Below are positions 18,236 through 48,657 of a DNA stretch of 50,744 nucleotides, piece by piece; within the stretch, counting starts at the first letter, position 1; each line of letters opens with the position of its first letter. Under the pieces are notes generated by a model. It had not been told where the DNA came from. It made no database searches and was given only the letters and a program-made list of their open reading frames with translations. A program made the translations under genes and the position numbers. This DNA comes from Octopus bimaculoides (taxonomy: Eukaryota), in the NCBI RefSeq assembly GCF_001194135.2, contig NC_069006.1:24494785-24545528 (forward strand). The letters are read 5' to 3'.

Positions 18236-18560
18236 CAGGCATGGCTGTGTGGTAAGAAGTTTGTTTCCCAACCCCAACCACTGCATGGCTCTGGGGTCGG
18301 TCCCACTGCATGGCTCCATAGGCAGGGCAAGTGTCTTCTATTATAGCCTTGGGTTGACCGAAGCCTTGTGAGTGGACTTTGTACATGGAAACTGAAAGAA
18401 GCCCATTGTGTGTGTATGTGCCTTTTGTCTCTGTATTTGTCCCTCACCACCGCCTGACAACTGATGTTGGTTTGTTTACGTCCCCATAATTTAGTGGTTC
18501 AGCAAAACAGTCTGACAGAATAAGTAACAGGCTTTAAAAAAAATTAATACTGGGGGTTGA
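18236..18560 (+). mobile_element. SINE family A
   Basis: homologous to 392-760. Confidence 0.8.
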
Positions 18561-20560: not shown

Positions 20561-20637
20561 CAAAATATGTTGCTGTTGTTCTGCATTTGTAATTGATATT
20601 TAATTTGACTTAAATTTTGTTTTATTTGTATTTCAAG

Positions 20638-20871
20638 GAGGAAGACAAGAAAATGCGGAGCTATGCTGTGGTGCCACCCATGATGCTGGATGCTCGATCA
20701 CGGAGTTTAAAGTTTATTAATAACAACGGCTTGATTGAAGATCCTATGGCTGAATTTAAAGAAAGGCAGCATTTAAATATTTGGACTCAACCAGAAAAAA
20801 TGATTTTCAAAGAAAAATACCTCCAACATCCCAAAAATTTCTGTTTAATTGCTTCATTTTTAGAAAGAAAG
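20638..20871 (+). CDS. NCOR1: NCoR exon 7: DAD/SANT1 N-part EEDKKMRSYAVVPPMMLD...WTQPEKMIFKEKYLQHPKNFCLIASFLERK
   Basis: ttcaag/gtgagt; SANT1 of the HDAC3 deacetylase-activation domain. Confidence 0.97.
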
Positions 20872-21195
20872 GTGAGTCCTGATGTTTTGGAAGTCCTCTT
20901 GCTGATCTACTCTGGCTCACCTCTATGAAGTGAAACCCATTTTTTATTGGTTATACCTGTCTTTTATCCATCTGGGGTGGGGGGGGGGCAGTGACAAACT
21001 GGGGGTAGATGTAATCTCTCAAAATTGTTTGCATTGTATCTAAATGAGAAACAACAAATATATATATCCATTTCGTGAGTCCCAACACCTGTAGATCCTA
21101 TGTCTCCCCACCAAGGGTCATACAGACCCTGACTGAGGGCCACTGGTTTAAAGAGAGACGAATGCTTCATGAATTGTTGTTCTGTTCTGTTTCAG

Positions 21196-21306
21196 ACTGT
21201 TGCTGATTGTATATTGCATTATTACTTAACGAAAAAGAATGAAAATTTTAAACAGTTATTACGAAAGCAAGGTGTAAAGAAAAGAAGAGCTTTCCCTAAA
21301 CCGCAG
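21196..21306 (+). CDS. NCOR1: NCoR exon 8: TVADCILHYYLTKKNENFKQLLRKQGVKKRRAFPKPQ
   Basis: tttcag/gtaagt; conserved DCxxxYYLTKKNENxK end of SANT1. Confidence 0.97.
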
Positions 21307-21694: not shown

Positions 21695-22052
21695 GCAGGC
21701 ATCTGTGGTTGAGAAGCTTACTTCCCAAGCATGTGGTCTTGGTTTCAATCCCACTGTGTGATACCTTGGTCAAGCGTCTTTTACTATGGCACTGTGGGTC
21801 GGCAAAAGCCTTGTGAGTGGATTTGGTAGACGGAAACTGAAAGAAGCCCATCGTATATGGATATATTTGTTTGTCTGTTTGTCCCCACCACCATTGCTTA
21901 ACAACTAATGCTGGTGTGTTTACGTCCCCATAACTTAGTGGTTTGGCAAAAGAGGCCGACAGAATAAGTACTAGTCTTACAAATAATAAGTCCTGGGGTC
22001 AGTTTGCTCGACTAAAGGCAATGCTCCAGCATGGCCGCAGTAAAAGAATAAA
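21695..22052 (+). mobile_element. SINE family A, near full length
   Basis: homologous to 392-760. Confidence 0.85.
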
Positions 22053-22814: not shown

Positions 22815-22903
22815 CAGTGTTAAAAAGGAACCTGATAAGGAAAGTGAAGAACTCTCCGAAATTACAGACATTACAACAGTTTCTGGATCAACAGATTCTG
22901 ATG
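22815..22903 (+). CDS. NCOR1: NCoR exon 10: SVKKEPDKESEELSEITDITTVSGSTDSD; start 22815 or 22818
   Basis: TAGCAG acceptor, gttggt donor, phases 2/1 fit. Confidence 0.75.
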
Positions 22904-23693: not shown

Positions 23694-23874
23694 CTGGTGG
23701 AGGCGTACATCAATGCGCATTGTGTAAAGTTCAACTGGAGAATTTCAGCATGAGTCGTCCAATCTCTTTGACCGATTGTTCAATGTATTCTCTTACTGAA
23801 GCAGAGGTGAAGCCTGATATGCGAGTTTGTAATTCATGTCGTGCCCGCTCTGTTAAACAGTCGCGCTGTGTGCA
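23694..23874 (+). CDS. NCOR1: NCoR exon 11: Cys-rich GGGVHQCALCK...RVCNSCRARSVKQSRCV(Q)
   Basis: ttcag/gtaaga, phases 1/2 fit, open frame. Confidence 0.85.
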
Positions 23875-24524
23875 GTAAGATCATTTTGTTGCTTTTTTCT
23901 TTCTTTCTTTCTTTTTAATCTCTCTCTCTGATAATAAGTTTGTTTTATGTAGTCAAAAAAGCATCGTTAGTTAATAAGTAATCATATATAGGATGCTAAT
24001 GAAACTTGTTCTTTGTTTCTTTGTTTAAATTCTACAGCCTAAATGTATGTTGCTGTTTAAAACATCCAGTATTATACGGTGTAAACCATGCTATCTAGCT
24101 TTTGTTATTTCTCTAAAAGGACAGATACAGGTTACATATTGCTTATGGAAAGATTATGATAGTGTGAAATATACATGCTCAACCTGCTAGAAATAGTAGC
24201 AAGAAATGTCTCAGATCACACAACCGACATACAGTCTAAAGGTCATATTGGATAATGTTTCTGATGTACACAAAAAAAAAAAATGGTCACAGTTGGAATG
24301 GATATGACCAAAGGTCTGCTTAGTCAAGGATGAATAATATTATAAAAACAGCAATGTAGTATTAGTTTCTTGCTAAAAGTTTTACTTGTAGAAATAATGG
24401 TGATATTGATTTATTGACTGAAATGATTCACTGCTTGTGTCTTTGAAGCAGCCAATTTTCCAATTGGAAATTGCATTGATTAACGTTTGCTAACCTTGTA
24501 TCTATGTTTATTCCTACCTTTCAG

Positions 24525-24640
24525 GTGTCCTGTGCCTACTTGTAAAATTCCAAAACGGAAAGTAAAACGTCTTTGGCCCCTCTCTGTGAAGTGGTCAGAA
24601 ATAGCCACTGAAATCAAAGAACCAATACTAATGGAGATGC
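24525..24640 (+). CDS. NCOR1: NCoR exon 12: CPVPTCKIPKRKVKRLWPLSVKWSEIATEIKEPILMEM
   Basis: tttcag/gtaaga, phases 2/1 fit. Confidence 0.85.
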
Positions 24641-24697
24641 GTAAGAAGCCTTCACATTCTAATTTGTTTTATTTTATTTTGTTTTTGTCTTTTAGGT

Positions 24698-24920
24698 CAG
24701 GGGTTCTCAACAAAGGGTCCTTGTAAGATTTTGTTAAAACTTATCTCAATGCTCAAAATTTTGTAATTTTTTTTTTATATACAATTCCTAAAAATATTTA
24801 TTTATAAAAATGTAATAGGTTTTTTTTAAAAACATGAAATGGCTATGAGGGGTCCAGTAGAATAAAATAGGAATCAAAGGGGTCCATATGTAAAAAAAAA
24901 AGGGGGGTTGAGAAACACTG
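24698..24920. mobile_element. hAT (Charlie-like) MITE
   Basis: TIRs caggggttctcaac / gttgagaaacactg; flanks ttttaggt vs gtctaagt resemble a decayed 8-bp TSD. Confidence 0.75.
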
Positions 24921-25336
24921 GTCTAAGTCATCTCTAAATTGCTAATATAGAATCGTCTTAATTAGAATGTGAATTATTTGTTTCCCTACTTCTCAATATC
25001 CTCTTCCCCCCCTCAGTTCATGAACAAACAAAGAAAGACTCTACTAAGTTACTCTACTGTCTACAAATAACAGCTAAACCCCTCTCAAATCACACCCTGC
25101 CATCCATCTTAAAAAAGGCAATGGCATGATAATGTAATTGTAGATATCCTTAATAAGATGGAATGGTCATGGCTGGCTTTCCTTTGACAATGTTAGGGTT
25201 AACTTGGTTCAAAACAGTTATTAAAGGGACGTATCTGTCTTTTTACTTCCTGTAGATCCCTTTTTTGTCTTTCTTTGTCTATTTTTAATAGTTTTTTTTT
25301 ACTTATCTAATTGTGTCGTTGTTTTTGTCTTTCCAG

Positions 25337-25456
25337 AAATCTCTGAAGATATTTCCCGCTGCTGTTCTGCTTGTTTTAATAGAATTGCTCGACAACTCGG
25401 TACAAACCCTCAAACCAATGAGCCATTAGTTCCTTTAGTACCTGAAAATAATGATG
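25337..25456 (+). CDS. NCOR1: NCoR exon 13: ISEDISRCCSACFNRIARQLGTNPQTNEPLVPLVPENND
   Basis: ttccag/gtaaat, phases 1/1 fit. Confidence 0.85.
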
Positions 25457-26909: not shown

Positions 26910-26963
26910 ATGGTGTTGAAACGTCAAGATGGACAGAAGAAGAAATGGAAGTTGCCAAACAAG
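26910..26963 (+). CDS. NCOR1: NCoR exon 14: SANT2 start DGVETSRWTEEEMEVAKQ
   Basis: tttcag/gtttgt; ETSRWTEEEMEVAK as in vertebrate SANT2. Confidence 0.96.
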
Positions 26964-27761
26964 GTTTGTTCAGTTTTACATCTATTTTGCTATGCTAGCA
27001 TGGGTTAGATGCATACATATTATCGAGCTGTTGTTTTACAGCTGGAGGCTCTTTCCTGTTGAATACGTCTGGGATTTTTTTTCTTTTCCTCTTCATACTC
27101 CATTTGTCTTTAAAAGTGCTGAGCTAACAGATAATCTGTTGTTGGCAGGGAAATGCTTATCAAAGTTCACAGATTCTAATTCAGCATTATTTCCATCTAA
27201 ATGCAGAATGCAAACATATACACAAGAACATGTATGCATGCACACACACACACACAGCAGGCTTCATACAGTTTCTACCTGCCAAATTACTCACCAGGCA
27301 TGGGTTAGTCCTGAGTTAAAGTAGAAGACACCTTGACTTATGACCAAGTTCTGGTCCGACTGACAGGTTGTAAGTCGGATCTGGTCATATGTCGGATTTA
27401 TATTTTTCAACACTATTTTCATTCAAACGAAAGTGATACTTGAAAGCGACTGAGTGAGAGACAGTGGCAAGCAGTGGAGGCTTGTGTGGCCAGATGCTGC
27501 CACAGTTATCGTACGTGCAGCTGCTCAATGTCCGAAAATCAATTTTTTCATTTATTTATTTTCTGTGATCATTAGTCACATAGATCGTAAGTCAAGGAGA
27601 GCGAGTAATGTTATTTTTGTTACGATTTATCAATTCTGGTTTTAACTTTCTAACGTTTCCTAAATTCCACTTGAATATTGCTGAAACTGCATCTGTCGGA
27701 ATCATTTGTATGGGGAGACATTGAAACCGTTTTTTTTTTTTTTGTTCCCTTCTTACACCAG

Positions 27762-27904
27762 GTCTAAGAGAACATGGTAGAGATTGGGTTGCTATTGCCA
27801 ACCAAGTTGGAACGAAAACGGAGGCCCAGTGTAAGAATTTCTATTTCAACTATAAGCGGAAATTGAAATTGGAACTCATCTTGCAAGAACACCATAAAGA
27901 AAAG
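27762..27904 (+). CDS. NCOR1: NCoR exon 15: SANT2 [48 protein letters not shown]
   Basis: caccag/gtaatc; conserved [11 protein letters not shown]. Confidence 0.97.
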
Positions 27905-30360: not shown

Positions 30361-30689
30361 ACCGGTCACCCTCATCATTGTCGTTGTCAAATGTCCTTCT
30401 GTGCTGACACAGGTTGTACTGTTTGACAGGAGCTGGTAAGGCCGGGCTTCACACCATGCTCCATTGTCCTTCCTCATGCCACCCGGGTGCTTTTTGTGTG
30501 ATACTGGCACTGAGCTAGAAAATTCTTTATCGTTTCAATCCTACTTTGGAGAAGAAATCATTATTTTGTAAGAAAAAAAAAAAAATGAAATTGTTATTTT
30601 GTAATAAAAAGAAAAACCATTTGTGTAGAATTCTATTCCTGTTTATGGAAATGTTTTATTCATTTTATTTTTTTGATTTTCTTTTCCAG

Positions 30690-33668
30690 AACCCATTATG
30701 TCTGAAAACACTGTGTTGTCCAGGAAATCGATGCTCTCTGGACTCGTCCACAACATGCCTCAGGACTTGCGTAAAGAACGGCGGCCGGAGCAGGCATCAC
30801 CATATATGTTTCCAGACATAGCAGCGTACAGAGGAATTACTGCACGGGAAATGCATGATCCGAGAGAGATACGTGATTTCGAAGTGCAAGACTTGTCAAG
30901 GCGTCCTATTGATTACCATGACAAAACGCAAAAGGCTTACAAAGGAGACCCTCGTGATTTTCAAAGGTCTATAGACTCTCACTTAAGGCCTGAAGAATCT
31001 CAAAGAAAAAATATGGGTCTGCCTCCTCCTGCCCATTCTCATCATCTCACTTCATCTAGCCTCCATCAGTCACAAGCAGATGAACCTATGCAACTTAAGT
31101 CTCATAAAACCATCGTCCCTCGGGTCAAATCACCCTCAATATATCACTCTGAGCCTGCACAAACAATATCACCAATCATCAGAGCTGTGCCACCCACTTC
31201 AAATTCTCCCTACAATTCACATCTTGCTCCCATGGAGTTTCAAAACAGGAACCAAATGGGGGCCCGTATACCACCACCACCACCATTGATTAATTCCAAA
31301 ATGTCCCCCAAGCTCCCTAAATCCCCTCCTGTTAGTTCACATCTCGTTCCACCTCCCACTGGATCCATCACCCACGGGACCCCTGTTAGTCATCCTGTAA
31401 CATCCACCTCGGGTGGCAATCATCCCAATAATTCAGGTATACCATCCCATCGAATTGACATCAGTCACCGGCAGCAGACTCCTCCCCAGGGATCTATAAC
31501 AAGGGGAACTCCACGGAACAGAGAACCTGGGACTGGGAGGGGTACCCCTGTTGGTCATGAAGCTAGTATAACCAGAGTTTCTCCAGTGATAGATCCCATG
31601 TTGGGCCGGGGAAATATCGTGTACGATTCAGGGATTAGACGGGTTGTGTATGAAAAAATATCAGAACCTTTTTATAGCTACCAAGATTTACTCTCCCCTA
31701 TTCGTACTTCCAGGCAAACGATAATGAGTGACTTTGTTACTGCTCAACACATGCCCAGAAGGGGTGCGACTCCTTCAGACAAAGATGAACGACAATCTCC
31801 CAGATCCCTGCCAAATGCTTCAAAGACCTATAGTTCAATTACTGAAAGCCAAAGAATGCCATCACCTGCAATACCACCATATCTTTCACAGTCATCGGGT
31901 ATCATCTATGTACCACATCAATCAGGTATGAATATTTCAGTTGCTGAGAGACTCAACCGAAATTCTCCTCTTCCATCCCAAAGTACGCCGTCTCCAAGGG
32001 ATGACAAAGGTATTTCTCCTGTACCAACTCCTTGGTCTAATAATCCAGCTAAAATTCCTCTCCTTGGCTCAGCAGCAAATGTTGCAATGGAACAATCACG
32101 TTATCCACCGTCCCCTCCTTCACGGCCCAGTATCGTTAAAGGTACTGGGTGGCAAAGACCAGACAACGGAGGGCATTTGCCTGACAGTACAACAATGCCA
32201 CCCAGCAAGGCAGCATCACCAAGACATGAAGGGCATGTCACAATCACCTACCCTCAATCTCTTAACACTCAGACACATGTTATTCCCCCCGAGCCACAGC
32301 ATCGAGAAACCCCTATAAAAATAATCGATCCCGAGATCCCTAAGGAAAGGGACAAAGAATGGGACAGAGAATCTCAAGACCGTTTTGATGTGAAAGAGTA
32401 TGATAAACATGAGATGGAGCCGAGGCCAGCTCGTGACTTCCATAATCGGCAGATGATGGTAAACAAAGCTGAACTCGAAAGTAACATAGCAGCCCAACCC
32501 CCTTGTCATGACAGACCTGGATATTCCACACCTTCCCGACACGGAACACCGTCCGGTGTCCGGGAGACCGATCCAAACCGACCCATACACATCGATGTAG
32601 ATCGACAGCCAGATTCATCCAAGACTCCTGACGCTCAGGACATTCAGCGGTTTCGAAGCAGCGACACAGAAATGACGCCACGGCCCCACCGGTCACCAGG
32701 TACTGGAGACACATCGTCTAATTTATTAAAAGCTCTGAAAAATAATGACAACATTCCTTCGTCCAATTTTGACTCCGATGCTGGTGCTGGTTCCAACGAC
32801 GACAGCTCGCAGTCGCGGACGGTCACAGCCGCTTATCTGATTGATGCGATCATCATCAACCAAATCCATCGTGGCAACGAGGAATTAGATTCCAAGTCGG
32901 GGGAAGAAGTTAAGGGCATGGTCAGCAGAGTGCCGGAACCGTGGCAGTCCGAGGGCCGGCAACCACCCCCGAGGGAGACCACTTCGCCGACCGTTATACA
33001 TCTCGACCAGGCGGCATCGCCGACGTTTACCAAACGTAAAGGCTATAGCAAATACCAACAAGAGAAGGAAGATTCCGCTGAGAAACCGTATTACACGTCT
33101 CCCCGTGAATCGCCCGGACCACAAATGGGATCTAACCACGGGCCAAATGGAGGAACTCAAACCAGTGGAGCTGGTAATAGTAATAACAGTAATAATAATA
33201 ACAATAATAACAGTAATAACAATAATAATAATAATAACAATAACAGTAATAATAACAGTAATAACAATAATAACCCGGGTAGTAGTAACACCAGCACCAG
33301 CAGTGGTTCCCATACTCCCCAGCCTCACCCACACCCTTCACAAGCAACTGGTAATGGTAGTAGTGGTGGTGGTAGTGGTGGCGGTGGTAGCAGTAATAAC
33401 AGTAGTGGTGGTGGTGGTGGTGGTGGAGGAGGAGGAGGCGGCGGAGGTGGTGGTGGTGAAAAAACTGATAAAGAGCGACCTCCCTCCGGATCAGGGGGGA
33501 GCTCTTCGAAATCTCCTGGCCCGCCCGGCTCTAACAAAGCCATCACGCTCGGCGAGCATATAGACGCCATCATCACACAGGACTACAGTAACCGTAGACT
33601 GGTCTATTCTATCCCGACTAAAGGTGGGCTTTTGAGCCAAATCAACGGTACTAGCAGCAAGTCTCCAT
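30690..33668 (+). CDS. NCOR1: NCoR exon 18 (2979 nt): repression-domain region with PPPLI, two GSI repeats, RQTIMSDFVTAQHM and two CoRNR boxes
   Basis: ttccag/gtaagt, phases 1/1; 1046-aa ORF 30698..33838; TVTAAYLIDAIIINQI and ITLGEHIDAIITQDY match NCoR ID3/ID2 boxes. Confidence 0.95.
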
Positions 33669-34074
33669 GTAAGTGGCTAATTTTGATTGACTGTTTCATG
33701 TTAACATTGTTCCATATCCATAACAATTGTACAGTCACAGCACTCAATTTCAGTGGGGATAGACACATAGATGTGTGTGTGTGTGCACGTGTGTGTATGT
33801 GTATAAATTTAAAGAAAGTGACAGAAAGAGAACAGTGAAATTGCTGTGAGGGAGAGTGGAGTATCCGATGTTTCGAACAGTCCACCTTCAGGGTTTAAGA
33901 TGACAGAAATGGTGGGAGGAGAGAGGGGTAAAATCTGCAGCGTTTTACATTGTCTGTGTTTTGGGTGATTGGTTGCAATTGATGGGCAACATACATGTAG
34001 ATGGGAAGTGATAGGAGGGAGGGAGAACAGAAGGGAAGCAGTGAAGAGTTGAGGGGAAATGAAGGTGAGAATAT

Positions 34075-48274: not shown

Positions 48275-48657
48275 TCTCTTTACTCTTTTACTTGTTTCAG
48301 TCATTTCACTGTGGCCATGCTGGAGCACTGCCTTTAGTCGAGCAAATTGACCCCAGGACTTATTCTTTGGAAGCCTAGTACTTATTGTATCGGTCTCTTT
48401 TGCCGAACCGCTAAGTTACGGGGACATAAACACACCAGCATCGGTTGTCAAGCAGTGTTGGTGGGGGCAAGCACAGACACACACGCATATATATACGACG
48501 AGCTTCTTTCAGTTTCCGTCTACCAAATCCACTCACAAATCTTTGGTTCGCCCAAGGCTGTATTAGGAGACACTTGCCCAAGGTGCCATGCAGTGGGACT
48601 GAACCCAGAACCATGTGGTTGGTAAGCAAGCTTCTTACCACACAGCCACTCCTACGC
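48275..48657 (-). mobile_element. SINE family A, full length, reverse
   Basis: reverse complement of 392-760 including head and tail. Confidence 0.85.

What the first reader, a model, noticed from the sequence alone, without database searches (positions are those of the whole stretch)
23694..25456. Putative double zinc-binding module inserted between SANT1 and SANT2 of NCoR
Seen: three in-phase exons encode HQ-CALC-x34-CNSC followed by CVQ-CPVPTC-x40-CCSAC-FNRIAR, with a basic KIPKRKVKR segment and W/P residues in the second unit. Established: vertebrate NCoR1/SMRT have a low-complexity linker here with no annotated zinc finger, and the second unit's spacing resembles THAP (C-x2-4-C-x35-50-C-x2-H) with Cys replacing His. 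I recall similar Cys motifs in arthropod orthologues but cannot verify this. Inference: an uncharacterised invertebrate C4 treble-clef-like pair that could give the HDAC3 corepressor direct DNA, chromatin or partner binding, lost in vertebrates.
Basis: partly seen in the sequence, partly recalled or inferred. Interest (0 to 1): 0.7.

Follow-up and report, generated by a model that had tools for sequence, protein, structure and literature searches.

The report
Unannotated double zinc finger in NCoR
Three real exons of an invertebrate NCoR/SMRT corepressor gene encode a conserved, very basic domain with two four-cysteine zinc sites between the two SANT domains; Pfam, the PDB and the papers searched do not describe it, it is found from molluscs to amphioxus, and its function is still only inferred.

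Summary
Exons 23694-23874, 24525-24640 and 25337-25456 (+ strand) have canonical splice sites.

The gene is an NCoR/SMRT orthologue. The module lies between the DAD/SANT1 domain and SANT2.

A profile search found 274 relatives. Of 79 long ones, 71 carry it next to NCoR SANT domains. Named carriers include molluscs, chelicerates, myriapods, crustaceans, insects, nematodes, echinoderms, a hemichordate and amphioxus.

In 66 diverse full modules, eight Cys are 98-100% conserved: C-x2-C-x34-C-x2-C and C-x4-C-x41-C-x2-C. The His and three further Cys are variable.

Against a related genome only the exons align, with dN/dS about 0.05. AlphaFold2 predicts a folded core (pLDDT about 90). Each unit has a zinc knuckle, short strands and a helix that starts at the second Cys pair. 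Median net charge is +12.

Pfam, PDB sequence profiles, Foldseek and the searched papers give no match. THAP homology is not supported.

Zinc binding, the function (I favour nucleic-acid or nucleosome contact) and the absence from vertebrates were not tested here.

The parts
23694..23874 (+). [not shown]
   Evidence: AG/GT splice sites and open frame. Orthologous exons in L001-L004, L007, L008 and L009. Only the exon aligns to L009.
24525..24640 (+). [not shown]
   Evidence: Same 116-nt exon in L001-L004 and L009. AlphaFold strands and helices over the equivalent tick residues.
25337..25456 (+). [not shown]
   Evidence: The CC[SP]ACFNRIAR motif appears in dozens of fragments.
23714..23839 (+). 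Predicted Zn site 1 ligand codons: C7 23714-16, C10 23723-25, C45 23828-30, C48 23837-39.
   Evidence: 98-100% Cys in 66 representative modules. Codons checked.
24526..25374 (+). [not shown]
   Evidence: 98-100% Cys in 66 representative modules. Codons checked.
20635..21306 (+). Context: the two exons of the DAD/SANT1 domain, about 20635-20871 and 21193-21306 (approximate ends taken from tblastn).
   Evidence: Best PDB match is the human NCOR2 DAD, 4A69_C, E 2.6e-37. Colinear with Haliotis NCoR residues 424-539.
22820..22903 (+). [not shown]
26910..27892 (+). Context: the SANT2 exons, 26910-26963 and 27762 to about 27892.
   Evidence: PDB 2LTP (NCOR2 SANT2), E 2.4e-20. Splice continuity. Haliotis residues 732-791.

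Best explanation
The three exons encode a constitutive, independently folded domain of about 115 residues in the invertebrate NCoR/SMRT corepressor. It contains two structural Zn(Cys)4 sites.

The domain is strongly basic. It sits about 35 residues upstream of the histone-tail-binding SANT2 and downstream of the HDAC3-activating DAD.

The mechanism I think most likely is this. The domain is a zinc-stabilised cationic surface that contacts nucleic acid (nucleosomal or linker DNA, possibly RNA) or another polyanionic chromatin surface. That contact would hold the DAD-HDAC3 unit on chromatin alongside, or in insects instead of, SANT2.

It was present in the bilaterian ancestor, and I believe it was lost in the vertebrate lineage.

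Shown here: real exons, position in the gene, conservation, the eight-Cys pattern, the predicted fold, and the charge. Inferred: zinc binding, the ligand pairing, and the whole functional step.
For: - Gene identity and position. Orthologues show S1-Z-S2 order in 42 of 79 long hits and Z-S2 in 26 more. They also carry GPS2_interact plus Myb domains.
- Breadth: 274 hits at E<=1e-3. Named carriers span Mollusca, Chelicerata, Myriapoda, Crustacea, Diptera, Lepidoptera, Nematoda, Echinodermata, Hemichordata and Cephalochordata.
- Ligands: eight Cys at 98-100%, while the other Cys and the His are at 41-76%.
- Selection: exon-only conservation and dN/dS about 0.05 against L009.
- Presence in mRNA: the tick module lies in an uninterrupted 2066-aa ORF on a 7.1-kb Logan contig, P0041, whereas the tick genomic locus L008 has introns.
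- Fold: pLDDT 88-94 over the core. Helices start at the second Cys pair of each unit.
- Charge: median net charge +12, median pI 9.7. Conserved basic columns lie on the two post-Cys helices and in the K-x-P-K-R-K-V-K-R-L-R segment.
- Autonomy: the module occurs in 1-3 copies in proteins with no SANT domain.
- Independence from SANT2: it is kept intact in insect-like orthologues with no Pfam-detectable SANT2 (PMC3590189 states that SMRTER lacks SANT2).
- Analogy from general knowledge: other class I HDAC scaffolds carry accessory zinc fingers, namely the MTA and RERE GATA-type fingers and the SAP30 zinc finger. PMC2673417 came up in the search; its title proposes a role for the SAP30 finger in nucleic-acid recognition.
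Against: - No zinc, DNA or nucleosome binding was measured.
- Neither Foldseek nor sequence profiles link the fold to any known nucleic-acid-binding finger.
- Small Cys-rich basic domains are also common protein-protein adaptors.
- The basic stretch PKRKVKRL looks like a classical nuclear localisation signal.
- If vertebrates really do without the module, it is not needed for core HDAC3 activation.
- A few orthologues have low net charge (minimum -2).
Confidence: 0.4

Rival explanations
1. The double zinc finger is a protein-protein interaction or scaffolding module. It would dock a partner (a transcription factor, another subunit of the HDAC3 complex, or a modifier), or pack against SANT2 or the DAD to fix their geometry, and would not touch nucleic acid.
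For: The module is always close to SANT2 through a conserved connector, NPQTNEPLVPLVPE. The weak, non-significant Foldseek neighbours are mostly protein-binding fingers such as RING, LIM and ZZ. Many small C4 fingers are adaptors (general knowledge). The domain is reused in non-NCoR proteins as tandem copies separated by low-complexity linkers.
Against: The module is retained with all eight Cys where SANT2 has decayed, so it is not merely a SANT2 support. Its very high conserved positive charge is more typical of polyanion binding. No partner is known.
Confidence: 0.3
2. Unit 2 is a divergent THAP-type finger (C2CH turned into C2CC) that recognises a specific DNA sequence. This would make invertebrate NCoR a sequence-specific DNA binder.
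For: The spacing C-x4-C-x41-C-x2-C-F falls within the THAP range. hhalign places C-x4-C on C-x4-C, L-r-x-L-P on f-h-x-F-P, and the last Cys pair on CSxHF, all colinearly over 46 columns. The segment is basic.
Against: That alignment has probability 0.6% and E 0.09, and the shallower profile gave 0.3%. The control THAP set hits PF05485 in 8 of 8 sequences. The module gives no THAP hit even at E<=10. No THAP structure appears among the listed Foldseek matches for the whole module (top 50 of 73) or among all 18 matches for unit 2 alone. The fourth ligand is Cys in 66 of 66 sequences. There is no AVPTIF motif. The Trp is not invariant and sits 3 residues after the Pro, not 7-9 as in THAP.
Confidence: 0.07
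3. The module mainly serves nuclear import. The invariant K-R-K-V-K-R-L stretch would be a classical monopartite nuclear localisation signal presented by a zinc scaffold.
For: PKRKVKRL resembles the SV40-type signal (general knowledge). The basic columns are more than 80% conserved.
Against: In the model the stretch forms strands inside the fold. In insects it is weakened to PNSRGRVKRLR or PNPKDRVKRFR, and in nematodes to RRKVKPTRPMP, while the Cys stay invariant. An import signal does not need about 115 conserved residues and eight Cys.
Confidence: 0.1
4. The exons are not part of the mature NCoR mRNA (pseudo-exons, or a chance Cys-rich open frame).
For: No RNA data exist for the organism of the window.
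Against: Canonical splice sites and frame continuity with both neighbouring exons. dN/dS about 0.05 with unalignable introns. The module is contiguous inside RefSeq and intron-free, transcript-like NCoR proteins of many species.
Confidence: 0.01

Closest known systems
THAP zinc finger (Pfam PF05485; THAP1, P-element transposase)
   Same: Unit 2 has a THAP-like ligand spacing (C-x4-C ... C-x2-[C]-F), a hydrophobic-x-Pro motif after a basic stretch, a helix between the two ligand pairs, and an overall basic character. The profile alignment is colinear.
   Different: There is no significant sequence or fold similarity. The last ligand is Cys rather than His in all 66 sequences. There is no AVPTIF motif. 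The Trp position differs and is not invariant. It is always preceded by a second, unrelated C4 unit.
Accessory zinc fingers of other class I HDAC corepressor scaffolds: the GATA-type finger after ELM2-SANT in MTA1-3 and RERE, and the SAP30 zinc finger of Sin3 (PMC2673417)
   Same: A small zinc-binding module placed next to the SANT or HDAC-binding part of a corepressor scaffold. Each has a zinc knuckle plus a helix carrying basic residues. Nucleic-acid or nucleosome contact has been proposed for these modules.
   Different: The spacing differs (x34 and x41 here, x17-18 in GATA). Pfam gives no hit to any zinc-finger family. Foldseek lists none of them. Here two fingers form one conserved module in the HDAC3-specific scaffold.
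Vertebrate NCoR1/SMRT linker between the DAD/SANT1 and SANT2
   Same: Same position in the orthologous protein. The flanking domains are highly similar (4A69_C E 2.6e-37, 2LTP E 2.4e-20).
   Different: From my recall of the human sequences, the vertebrate linker is an acidic/basic low-complexity stretch without Cys. This was not checked here, because only the isolated SANT domains are in the PDB and no vertebrate full-length protein could be fetched.
PARP-type, RING, LIM and ZZ fingers (the top Foldseek neighbours)
   Same: Zinc-stabilised small domains of similar size.
   Different: E values are 0.7 or higher, probabilities 0.2 or lower, and TM-scores normalised to the target are mostly below 0.4, at best about 0.5 over roughly 50 aligned columns. 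This is noise typical of any Cys-rich model.

Membership tests
NCoR/SMRT corepressor (the gene that carries the module) | DAD-type SANT1 with the extended N-terminal helix | tested here: met
   The window exons at about 20635-20871 and 21193-21306 match the human NCOR2 DAD, 4A69_C, at E 2.6e-37 over 92 residues. They are 75% identical to Haliotis NCoR.
NCoR/SMRT corepressor (the gene that carries the module) | A second SANT domain (SANT2, the histone interaction domain) downstream | tested here: met
   Exons 26910-26963 and 27762 onward match NCOR2 SANT2, 2LTP, at E 2.4e-20.
NCoR/SMRT corepressor (the gene that carries the module) | N-terminal GPS2-interacting domain (PF15784) | not testable with these tools
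   The window starts downstream of it: the first aligned exon corresponds to Haliotis residue 339. Module-bearing orthologues from abalone, amphioxus, a sand fly and P0044 do have PF15784.
NCoR/SMRT corepressor (the gene that carries the module) | C-terminal CoRNR-box nuclear-receptor interaction motif (I/L-x-x-I/V-I) | tested here: met
   ITLGEHIDAIITQDY at 33533-33658 aligns with Haliotis residues 2017-2056. This is a motif match by eye only.
THAP zinc finger | C2CH ligand signature C-x2-4-C-x35-53-C-x2-H | tested here: not met
   The spacing fits, but the fourth ligand is Cys in 66 of 66 representative sequences.
THAP zinc finger | Match to the family profile (PF05485), or profile-profile similarity | tested here: not met
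   No THAP hit at E<=10 for six module sequences. hhalign against a validated THAP alignment gave probabilities of 0.3% and 0.6%.
THAP zinc finger | Beta-alpha-beta THAP fold | tested here: inconclusive
   No THAP structure appears among the listed Foldseek PDB matches for the module (top 50 of 73 at E<=10) or among all 18 for unit 2 alone. Foldseek is weak on small zinc domains, and the order of secondary-structure elements in unit 2 (strand, helix, helix, strand, helix) does not exclude a distant relation.
THAP zinc finger | C-terminal AVPTIF motif and invariant Trp, Phe and Pro | tested here: not met
   There is no AVPTIF. The connector is NPQTNEPLVPLVPE and is itself absent in ticks and insects. 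Only the Pro of L-P is invariant. The Trp is replaced by Leu in many sequences.
Structural zinc finger, treble-clef-like (generic class) | Four invariant ligands per unit: one pair in a knuckle and one pair at the N-terminus of a helix | tested here: met
   Eight Cys at 98-100%. In the AlphaFold model of the tick protein the helices at 67-76 and 129-139 begin at the second Cys pairs, and the first pairs lie in turns next to short strands.
Structural zinc finger, treble-clef-like (generic class) | Actual binding of two Zn2+ ions per module | not testable with these tools
   This needs metal analysis of purified protein.
GATA-type zinc finger (as in MTA and RERE) | C-x2-C-x17-18-C-x2-C spacing and a match to the family profile | tested here: not met
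   Unit 1 spacing is x34. Pfam gives no GATA hit.
Nuclear-receptor C4 double zinc finger | C-x2-C-x13-C-x2-C and C-x5-C-x9-C-x2-C spacing, and a zf-C4 profile match | tested here: not met
   The spacings are x34 and x4/x41. Pfam gives no zf-C4 hit.

The most novel reading that the evidence does not exclude
Ancestral bilaterian NCoR carried its own nucleic-acid or nucleosome-reading double zinc finger of a previously unrecognised fold family. The HDAC3 corepressor could then engage chromatin directly, or even recognise particular DNA or RNA, without a recruiting transcription factor. Vertebrates lost the domain. Insects kept it and let SANT2 decay. The same domain was reused in tandem arrays in other, uncharacterised proteins.
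Probability: 0.3. Interest if true: 0.75.

Novelty: new variant of a known kind. Interest (0 to 1): 0.6.

Why it matters
NCoR/SMRT-HDAC3 is one of the most studied corepressor systems. It is usually described as having no chromatin contact of its own beyond SANT2 and its recruiting factors.

A folded, strongly conserved two-zinc domain lies between the DAD and SANT2. It is present in relatives of the model organisms (a sand fly, a moth, nematodes). It is not covered by Pfam or the PDB, and several carriers have empty or misleading public names.

If it binds DNA, RNA or nucleosomes, it changes how HDAC3 targeting should be pictured in most animals. It would also explain how insect SMRTER can work without a recognisable SANT2.

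It gives a clean evolutionary contrast: the domain was lost in vertebrates, and SANT2 was lost in insects. It also gives a small, easily expressed domain for structural work, and it defines a new domain family for annotation.

Tried and rejected
1. Pfam on the window peptide, five orthologous modules and full-length orthologues gave only noise (E>=0.13) over the module.
2. PDB sequence profiles from 5-, 43- and 40-sequence alignments gave nothing credible. A PAT1 hit at E 0.005 is the sum of two weak Cys-free stretches with per-stretch E of 0.24 and 860, so I reject it as chance.
3. Foldseek of the whole module against the PDB and the viral library, and of unit 2 against the PDB, gave no match at E<=0.001. 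The best E values were 0.72, 0.68 and 1.7.
4. THAP homology is not supported.
5. Internal duplication of unit 1 and unit 2: MAFFT first misaligned unit-1 fragments onto unit 2, which suggested it. hhalign then gave E 0.28 with shallow profiles, and only P 0.0086 over 24 C-terminal columns with deep profiles. I leave this as a weak hint.
6. The spliced window peptide could not be submitted to the representative search or to structure prediction. I used allowed database proteins instead: the tick protein P0009, and P0021 (species not identified). The models are therefore of orthologues, not of the window protein.
7. The third homologue search, with the DAD, returned only proteins of 179 aa or fewer. 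No vertebrate full-length NCoR was obtained, so the vertebrate linker could not be inspected.
8. The tRNA and Rfam scans of the window found nothing.
9. Four literature searches and three papers yielded no description of the module.

Full report

The window is AT-rich eukaryotic DNA with long introns. They measure 181, 116 and 120 nt. Joined, they give one open frame of 138 complete codons. The peptide carries exactly the described pattern: HQ-CALC-x34-CNSC, CVQ-CPVPTC-x40-CCSAC-FNRIAR.

**2. Which gene is it?**

The flanking exons are the two SANT domains of an NCoR/SMRT orthologue. The upstream pair matches the human NCOR2 deacetylase-activating domain (4A69_C, E 2.6e-37). The downstream pair matches NCOR2 SANT2 (2LTP, E 2.4e-20). 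The whole + strand from 2772 to 33658 is colinear with the 2383-residue abalone protein XP_046570749.1. In that protein the module is residues 594-729, between SANT1 (424-539) and SANT2 (732-791). A CoRNR-like motif (IDAIITQDY) lies further downstream.

**3. Is it more than chance, and are the exons used?**

- In ticks the module lies in an uninterrupted 2066-residue ORF on a 7.1-kb assembled contig, whereas the tick genomic locus has introns between the three parts. The exons are therefore spliced together there.
- No RNA data exist for the window's own species.

**4. How widespread is it, and what exactly is conserved?**

A profile search of 1.84 billion cluster representatives found 274 proteins at E<=1e-3 and 142 at E<=1e-10. 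Of the 79 listed hits of 400 residues or more:

| Arrangement | Number |
|---|---|
| SANT1 - module - SANT2 | 42 |
| module - SANT2 (models truncated at the N-terminus) | 26 |
| SANT1 - module | 3 |
| module only | 8 |

Names could be read for 30 clusters. They include:
- Molluscs: Haliotis, Potamilus, Bulinus
- Chelicerates: Rhipicephalus, Dermacentor, Centruroides, Nymphon
- Myriapods: Chamberlinius, Strigamia
- Crustacean: Notodromas
- Insects: Nyssomyia, Ostrinia
- Nematodes: Steinernema, Dirofilaria
- Echinoderms: Antedon, Apostichopus
- Hemichordate: Glandiceps
- Cephalochordate: Branchiostoma

The module therefore dates at least to the bilaterian ancestor, and it is present in a chordate.

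In 66 full-length representative modules, eight Cys are 98-100% conserved. In the window peptide these are C7, C10, C45, C48, C61, C66, C108 and C111. The other candidate ligands vary: the His before C7 is at 42%, C28 at 41%, the Cys of R-C-R at 45%, and the first Cys of CC at 76%. The Cys of the window's 'CVQ' is specific to its lineage.

The defining pattern is thus C-x2-C-x34-C-x2-C followed by C-x4-C-x41-C-x2-C. This is what two separate Zn(Cys)4 sites would look like.

**5. Predicted structure**

The spliced window peptide could not be submitted, so I modelled allowed orthologues. I first checked the alignments by eye, because MAFFT initially misplaced unit-1 fragments onto unit 2.

- The tick module gives mean pLDDT 79, with 88-94 over the core.
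- Unit 2 alone gives about 90 over its core, with the same helices.
- In both units the first Cys pair lies in a turn next to short strands. The second pair opens a helix (CSSC-RCKSVRRR and CSAC-FNRIARKL). Unit 2 has two extra helices in between.
- A disordered linker is thereby excluded as far as prediction can tell.

The module is very basic: median net charge +12 and median pI 9.7. The conserved Arg and Lys columns lie on the two post-Cys helices and in the K-x-P-K-R-K-V-K-R-L-R strand segment.

**6. Comparison with known families**

- Pfam (a 2025 copy) gives nothing over the module, whether in isolated modules or in full-length orthologues. Those orthologues are otherwise annotated with GPS2_interact and Myb domains.
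- PDB sequence profiles give nothing credible.
- Foldseek against the PDB and the viral library gives only noise.
- The THAP lead was tested directly. Profile-profile comparison with unit 2 gives a colinear alignment with probability below 1%.
- The last ligand is always Cys, AVPTIF is absent, and no THAP structure appears among the listed Foldseek matches.
- I therefore do not file the module as THAP. The resemblance is one of spacing only.
- The two units show at most a faint similarity in their C-terminal halves (P 0.0086).
- Four literature searches and three papers on SMRTER, GEI-8 and schistosome NCoR do not mention the module.

**7. What does it do?**

Nothing here measures function. 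Four observations constrain it:
1. The module is an autonomous domain. It occurs in one to three copies in proteins with no SANT domains, and unit 2 alone ends a mussel protein.
2. It is under its own selection. Insect-like orthologues with no Pfam-detectable SANT2 keep all eight Cys (PMC3590189 notes that SMRTER lacks SANT2).
3. Its conserved surface residues are cationic.
4. It sits next to the histone-tail-binding SANT2 and the HDAC3-activating DAD.

My best reading (confidence about 0.4) is a zinc-stabilised cationic platform that contacts nucleosomal or linker DNA, RNA or another polyanionic chromatin surface. It would help keep DAD-HDAC3 on its substrate. This would be analogous in role, not in ancestry, to the GATA finger of MTA and RERE and to the SAP30 finger.

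The rivals are a protein-docking module (0.3), a scaffolded nuclear import signal (0.1), a true THAP-like sequence reader (0.07) and an artefact (0.01).

**8. What remains untested?**

- Zinc binding and the ligand pairing.
- Any binding activity.
- The presence of the module in D. melanogaster Smr and C. elegans GEI-8 themselves.
- Its presence outside Bilateria.
- Its absence from vertebrate NCoR1/SMRT. I recall the human linkers as Cys-free low-complexity sequence. However, the tools gave me no vertebrate full-length protein, and the PDB holds only the isolated SANT domains.

**9. Verdict**

It is unproven on function.

The module is a new domain family of a familiar general kind, in a heavily studied protein. 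Interest is moderately high.

Noticed in passing
window 395-646, 4309-4552, 8552-8677, 18236-18500, 21768-21964, 37722-37875, 48395-48648 (-): A dispersed repeat of about 260 bp, with copies 72-79% identical, lies in the introns and flanks of the gene. It is probably a SINE-like element. It gave no tRNA or Rfam match.
   Followed up: partly
[not shown]
   Followed up: no
[not shown]
   Followed up: no
P0123 (1010 aa, three modules), P0175 (420 aa), P0158 = Mytilus californianus XP_052092831.1 (unit 2 at the C-terminus): The module, or unit 2 alone, also occurs in proteins with no SANT or any other Pfam domain. One of them carries three tandem copies separated by Ser/Lys-rich linkers. So the module is a mobile, autonomous domain. 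The source organisms of P0123 and P0175 are unknown.
   Followed up: partly
P0072, P0076, P0062 (insect-like), L006 4375-4752 and 4837 onward: Insect-type orthologues keep all eight Cys. Their SANT2 is degenerate or undetectable by Pfam, and in L006 the whole module is one exon. The pattern is complementary to vertebrates, which keep SANT2 and, from recall, lack the module.
   Followed up: partly
Public records of module carriers: Several carriers have empty or misleading names: tick 'uncharacterized protein LOC119435497' (a fragment of NCoR split off by the gene model), Ostrinia 'nucleolar and coiled-body phosphoprotein 1-like', Apostichopus 'serine/arginine repetitive matrix protein 2', and Nyssomyia 'Putative histone H3-k4 methylation'.
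   Followed up: no
[not shown]
   Followed up: no
[not shown]
   Followed up: yes
window about 33200-33500 (large exon 30677-33835): Long Asn/Ser and Gly homopolymer tracts lie inside the big coding exon. GSIT[HR]GTP repeats typical of SMRT-family proteins lie further upstream in the same exon.
   Followed up: no
unit 1 versus unit 2 (alignments A11 and A10): With deep profiles, the C-terminal halves of the two units align weakly (24 columns, P 0.0086). MAFFT also spontaneously superposed unit-1 fragments on unit 2. This is a faint hint that the pair arose by an ancient duplication.
   Followed up: partly
L009 4891-5649: A reverse-transcriptase ORF (RVT_1) lies in the large intron upstream of SANT1 in the related genome.
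   Followed up: no
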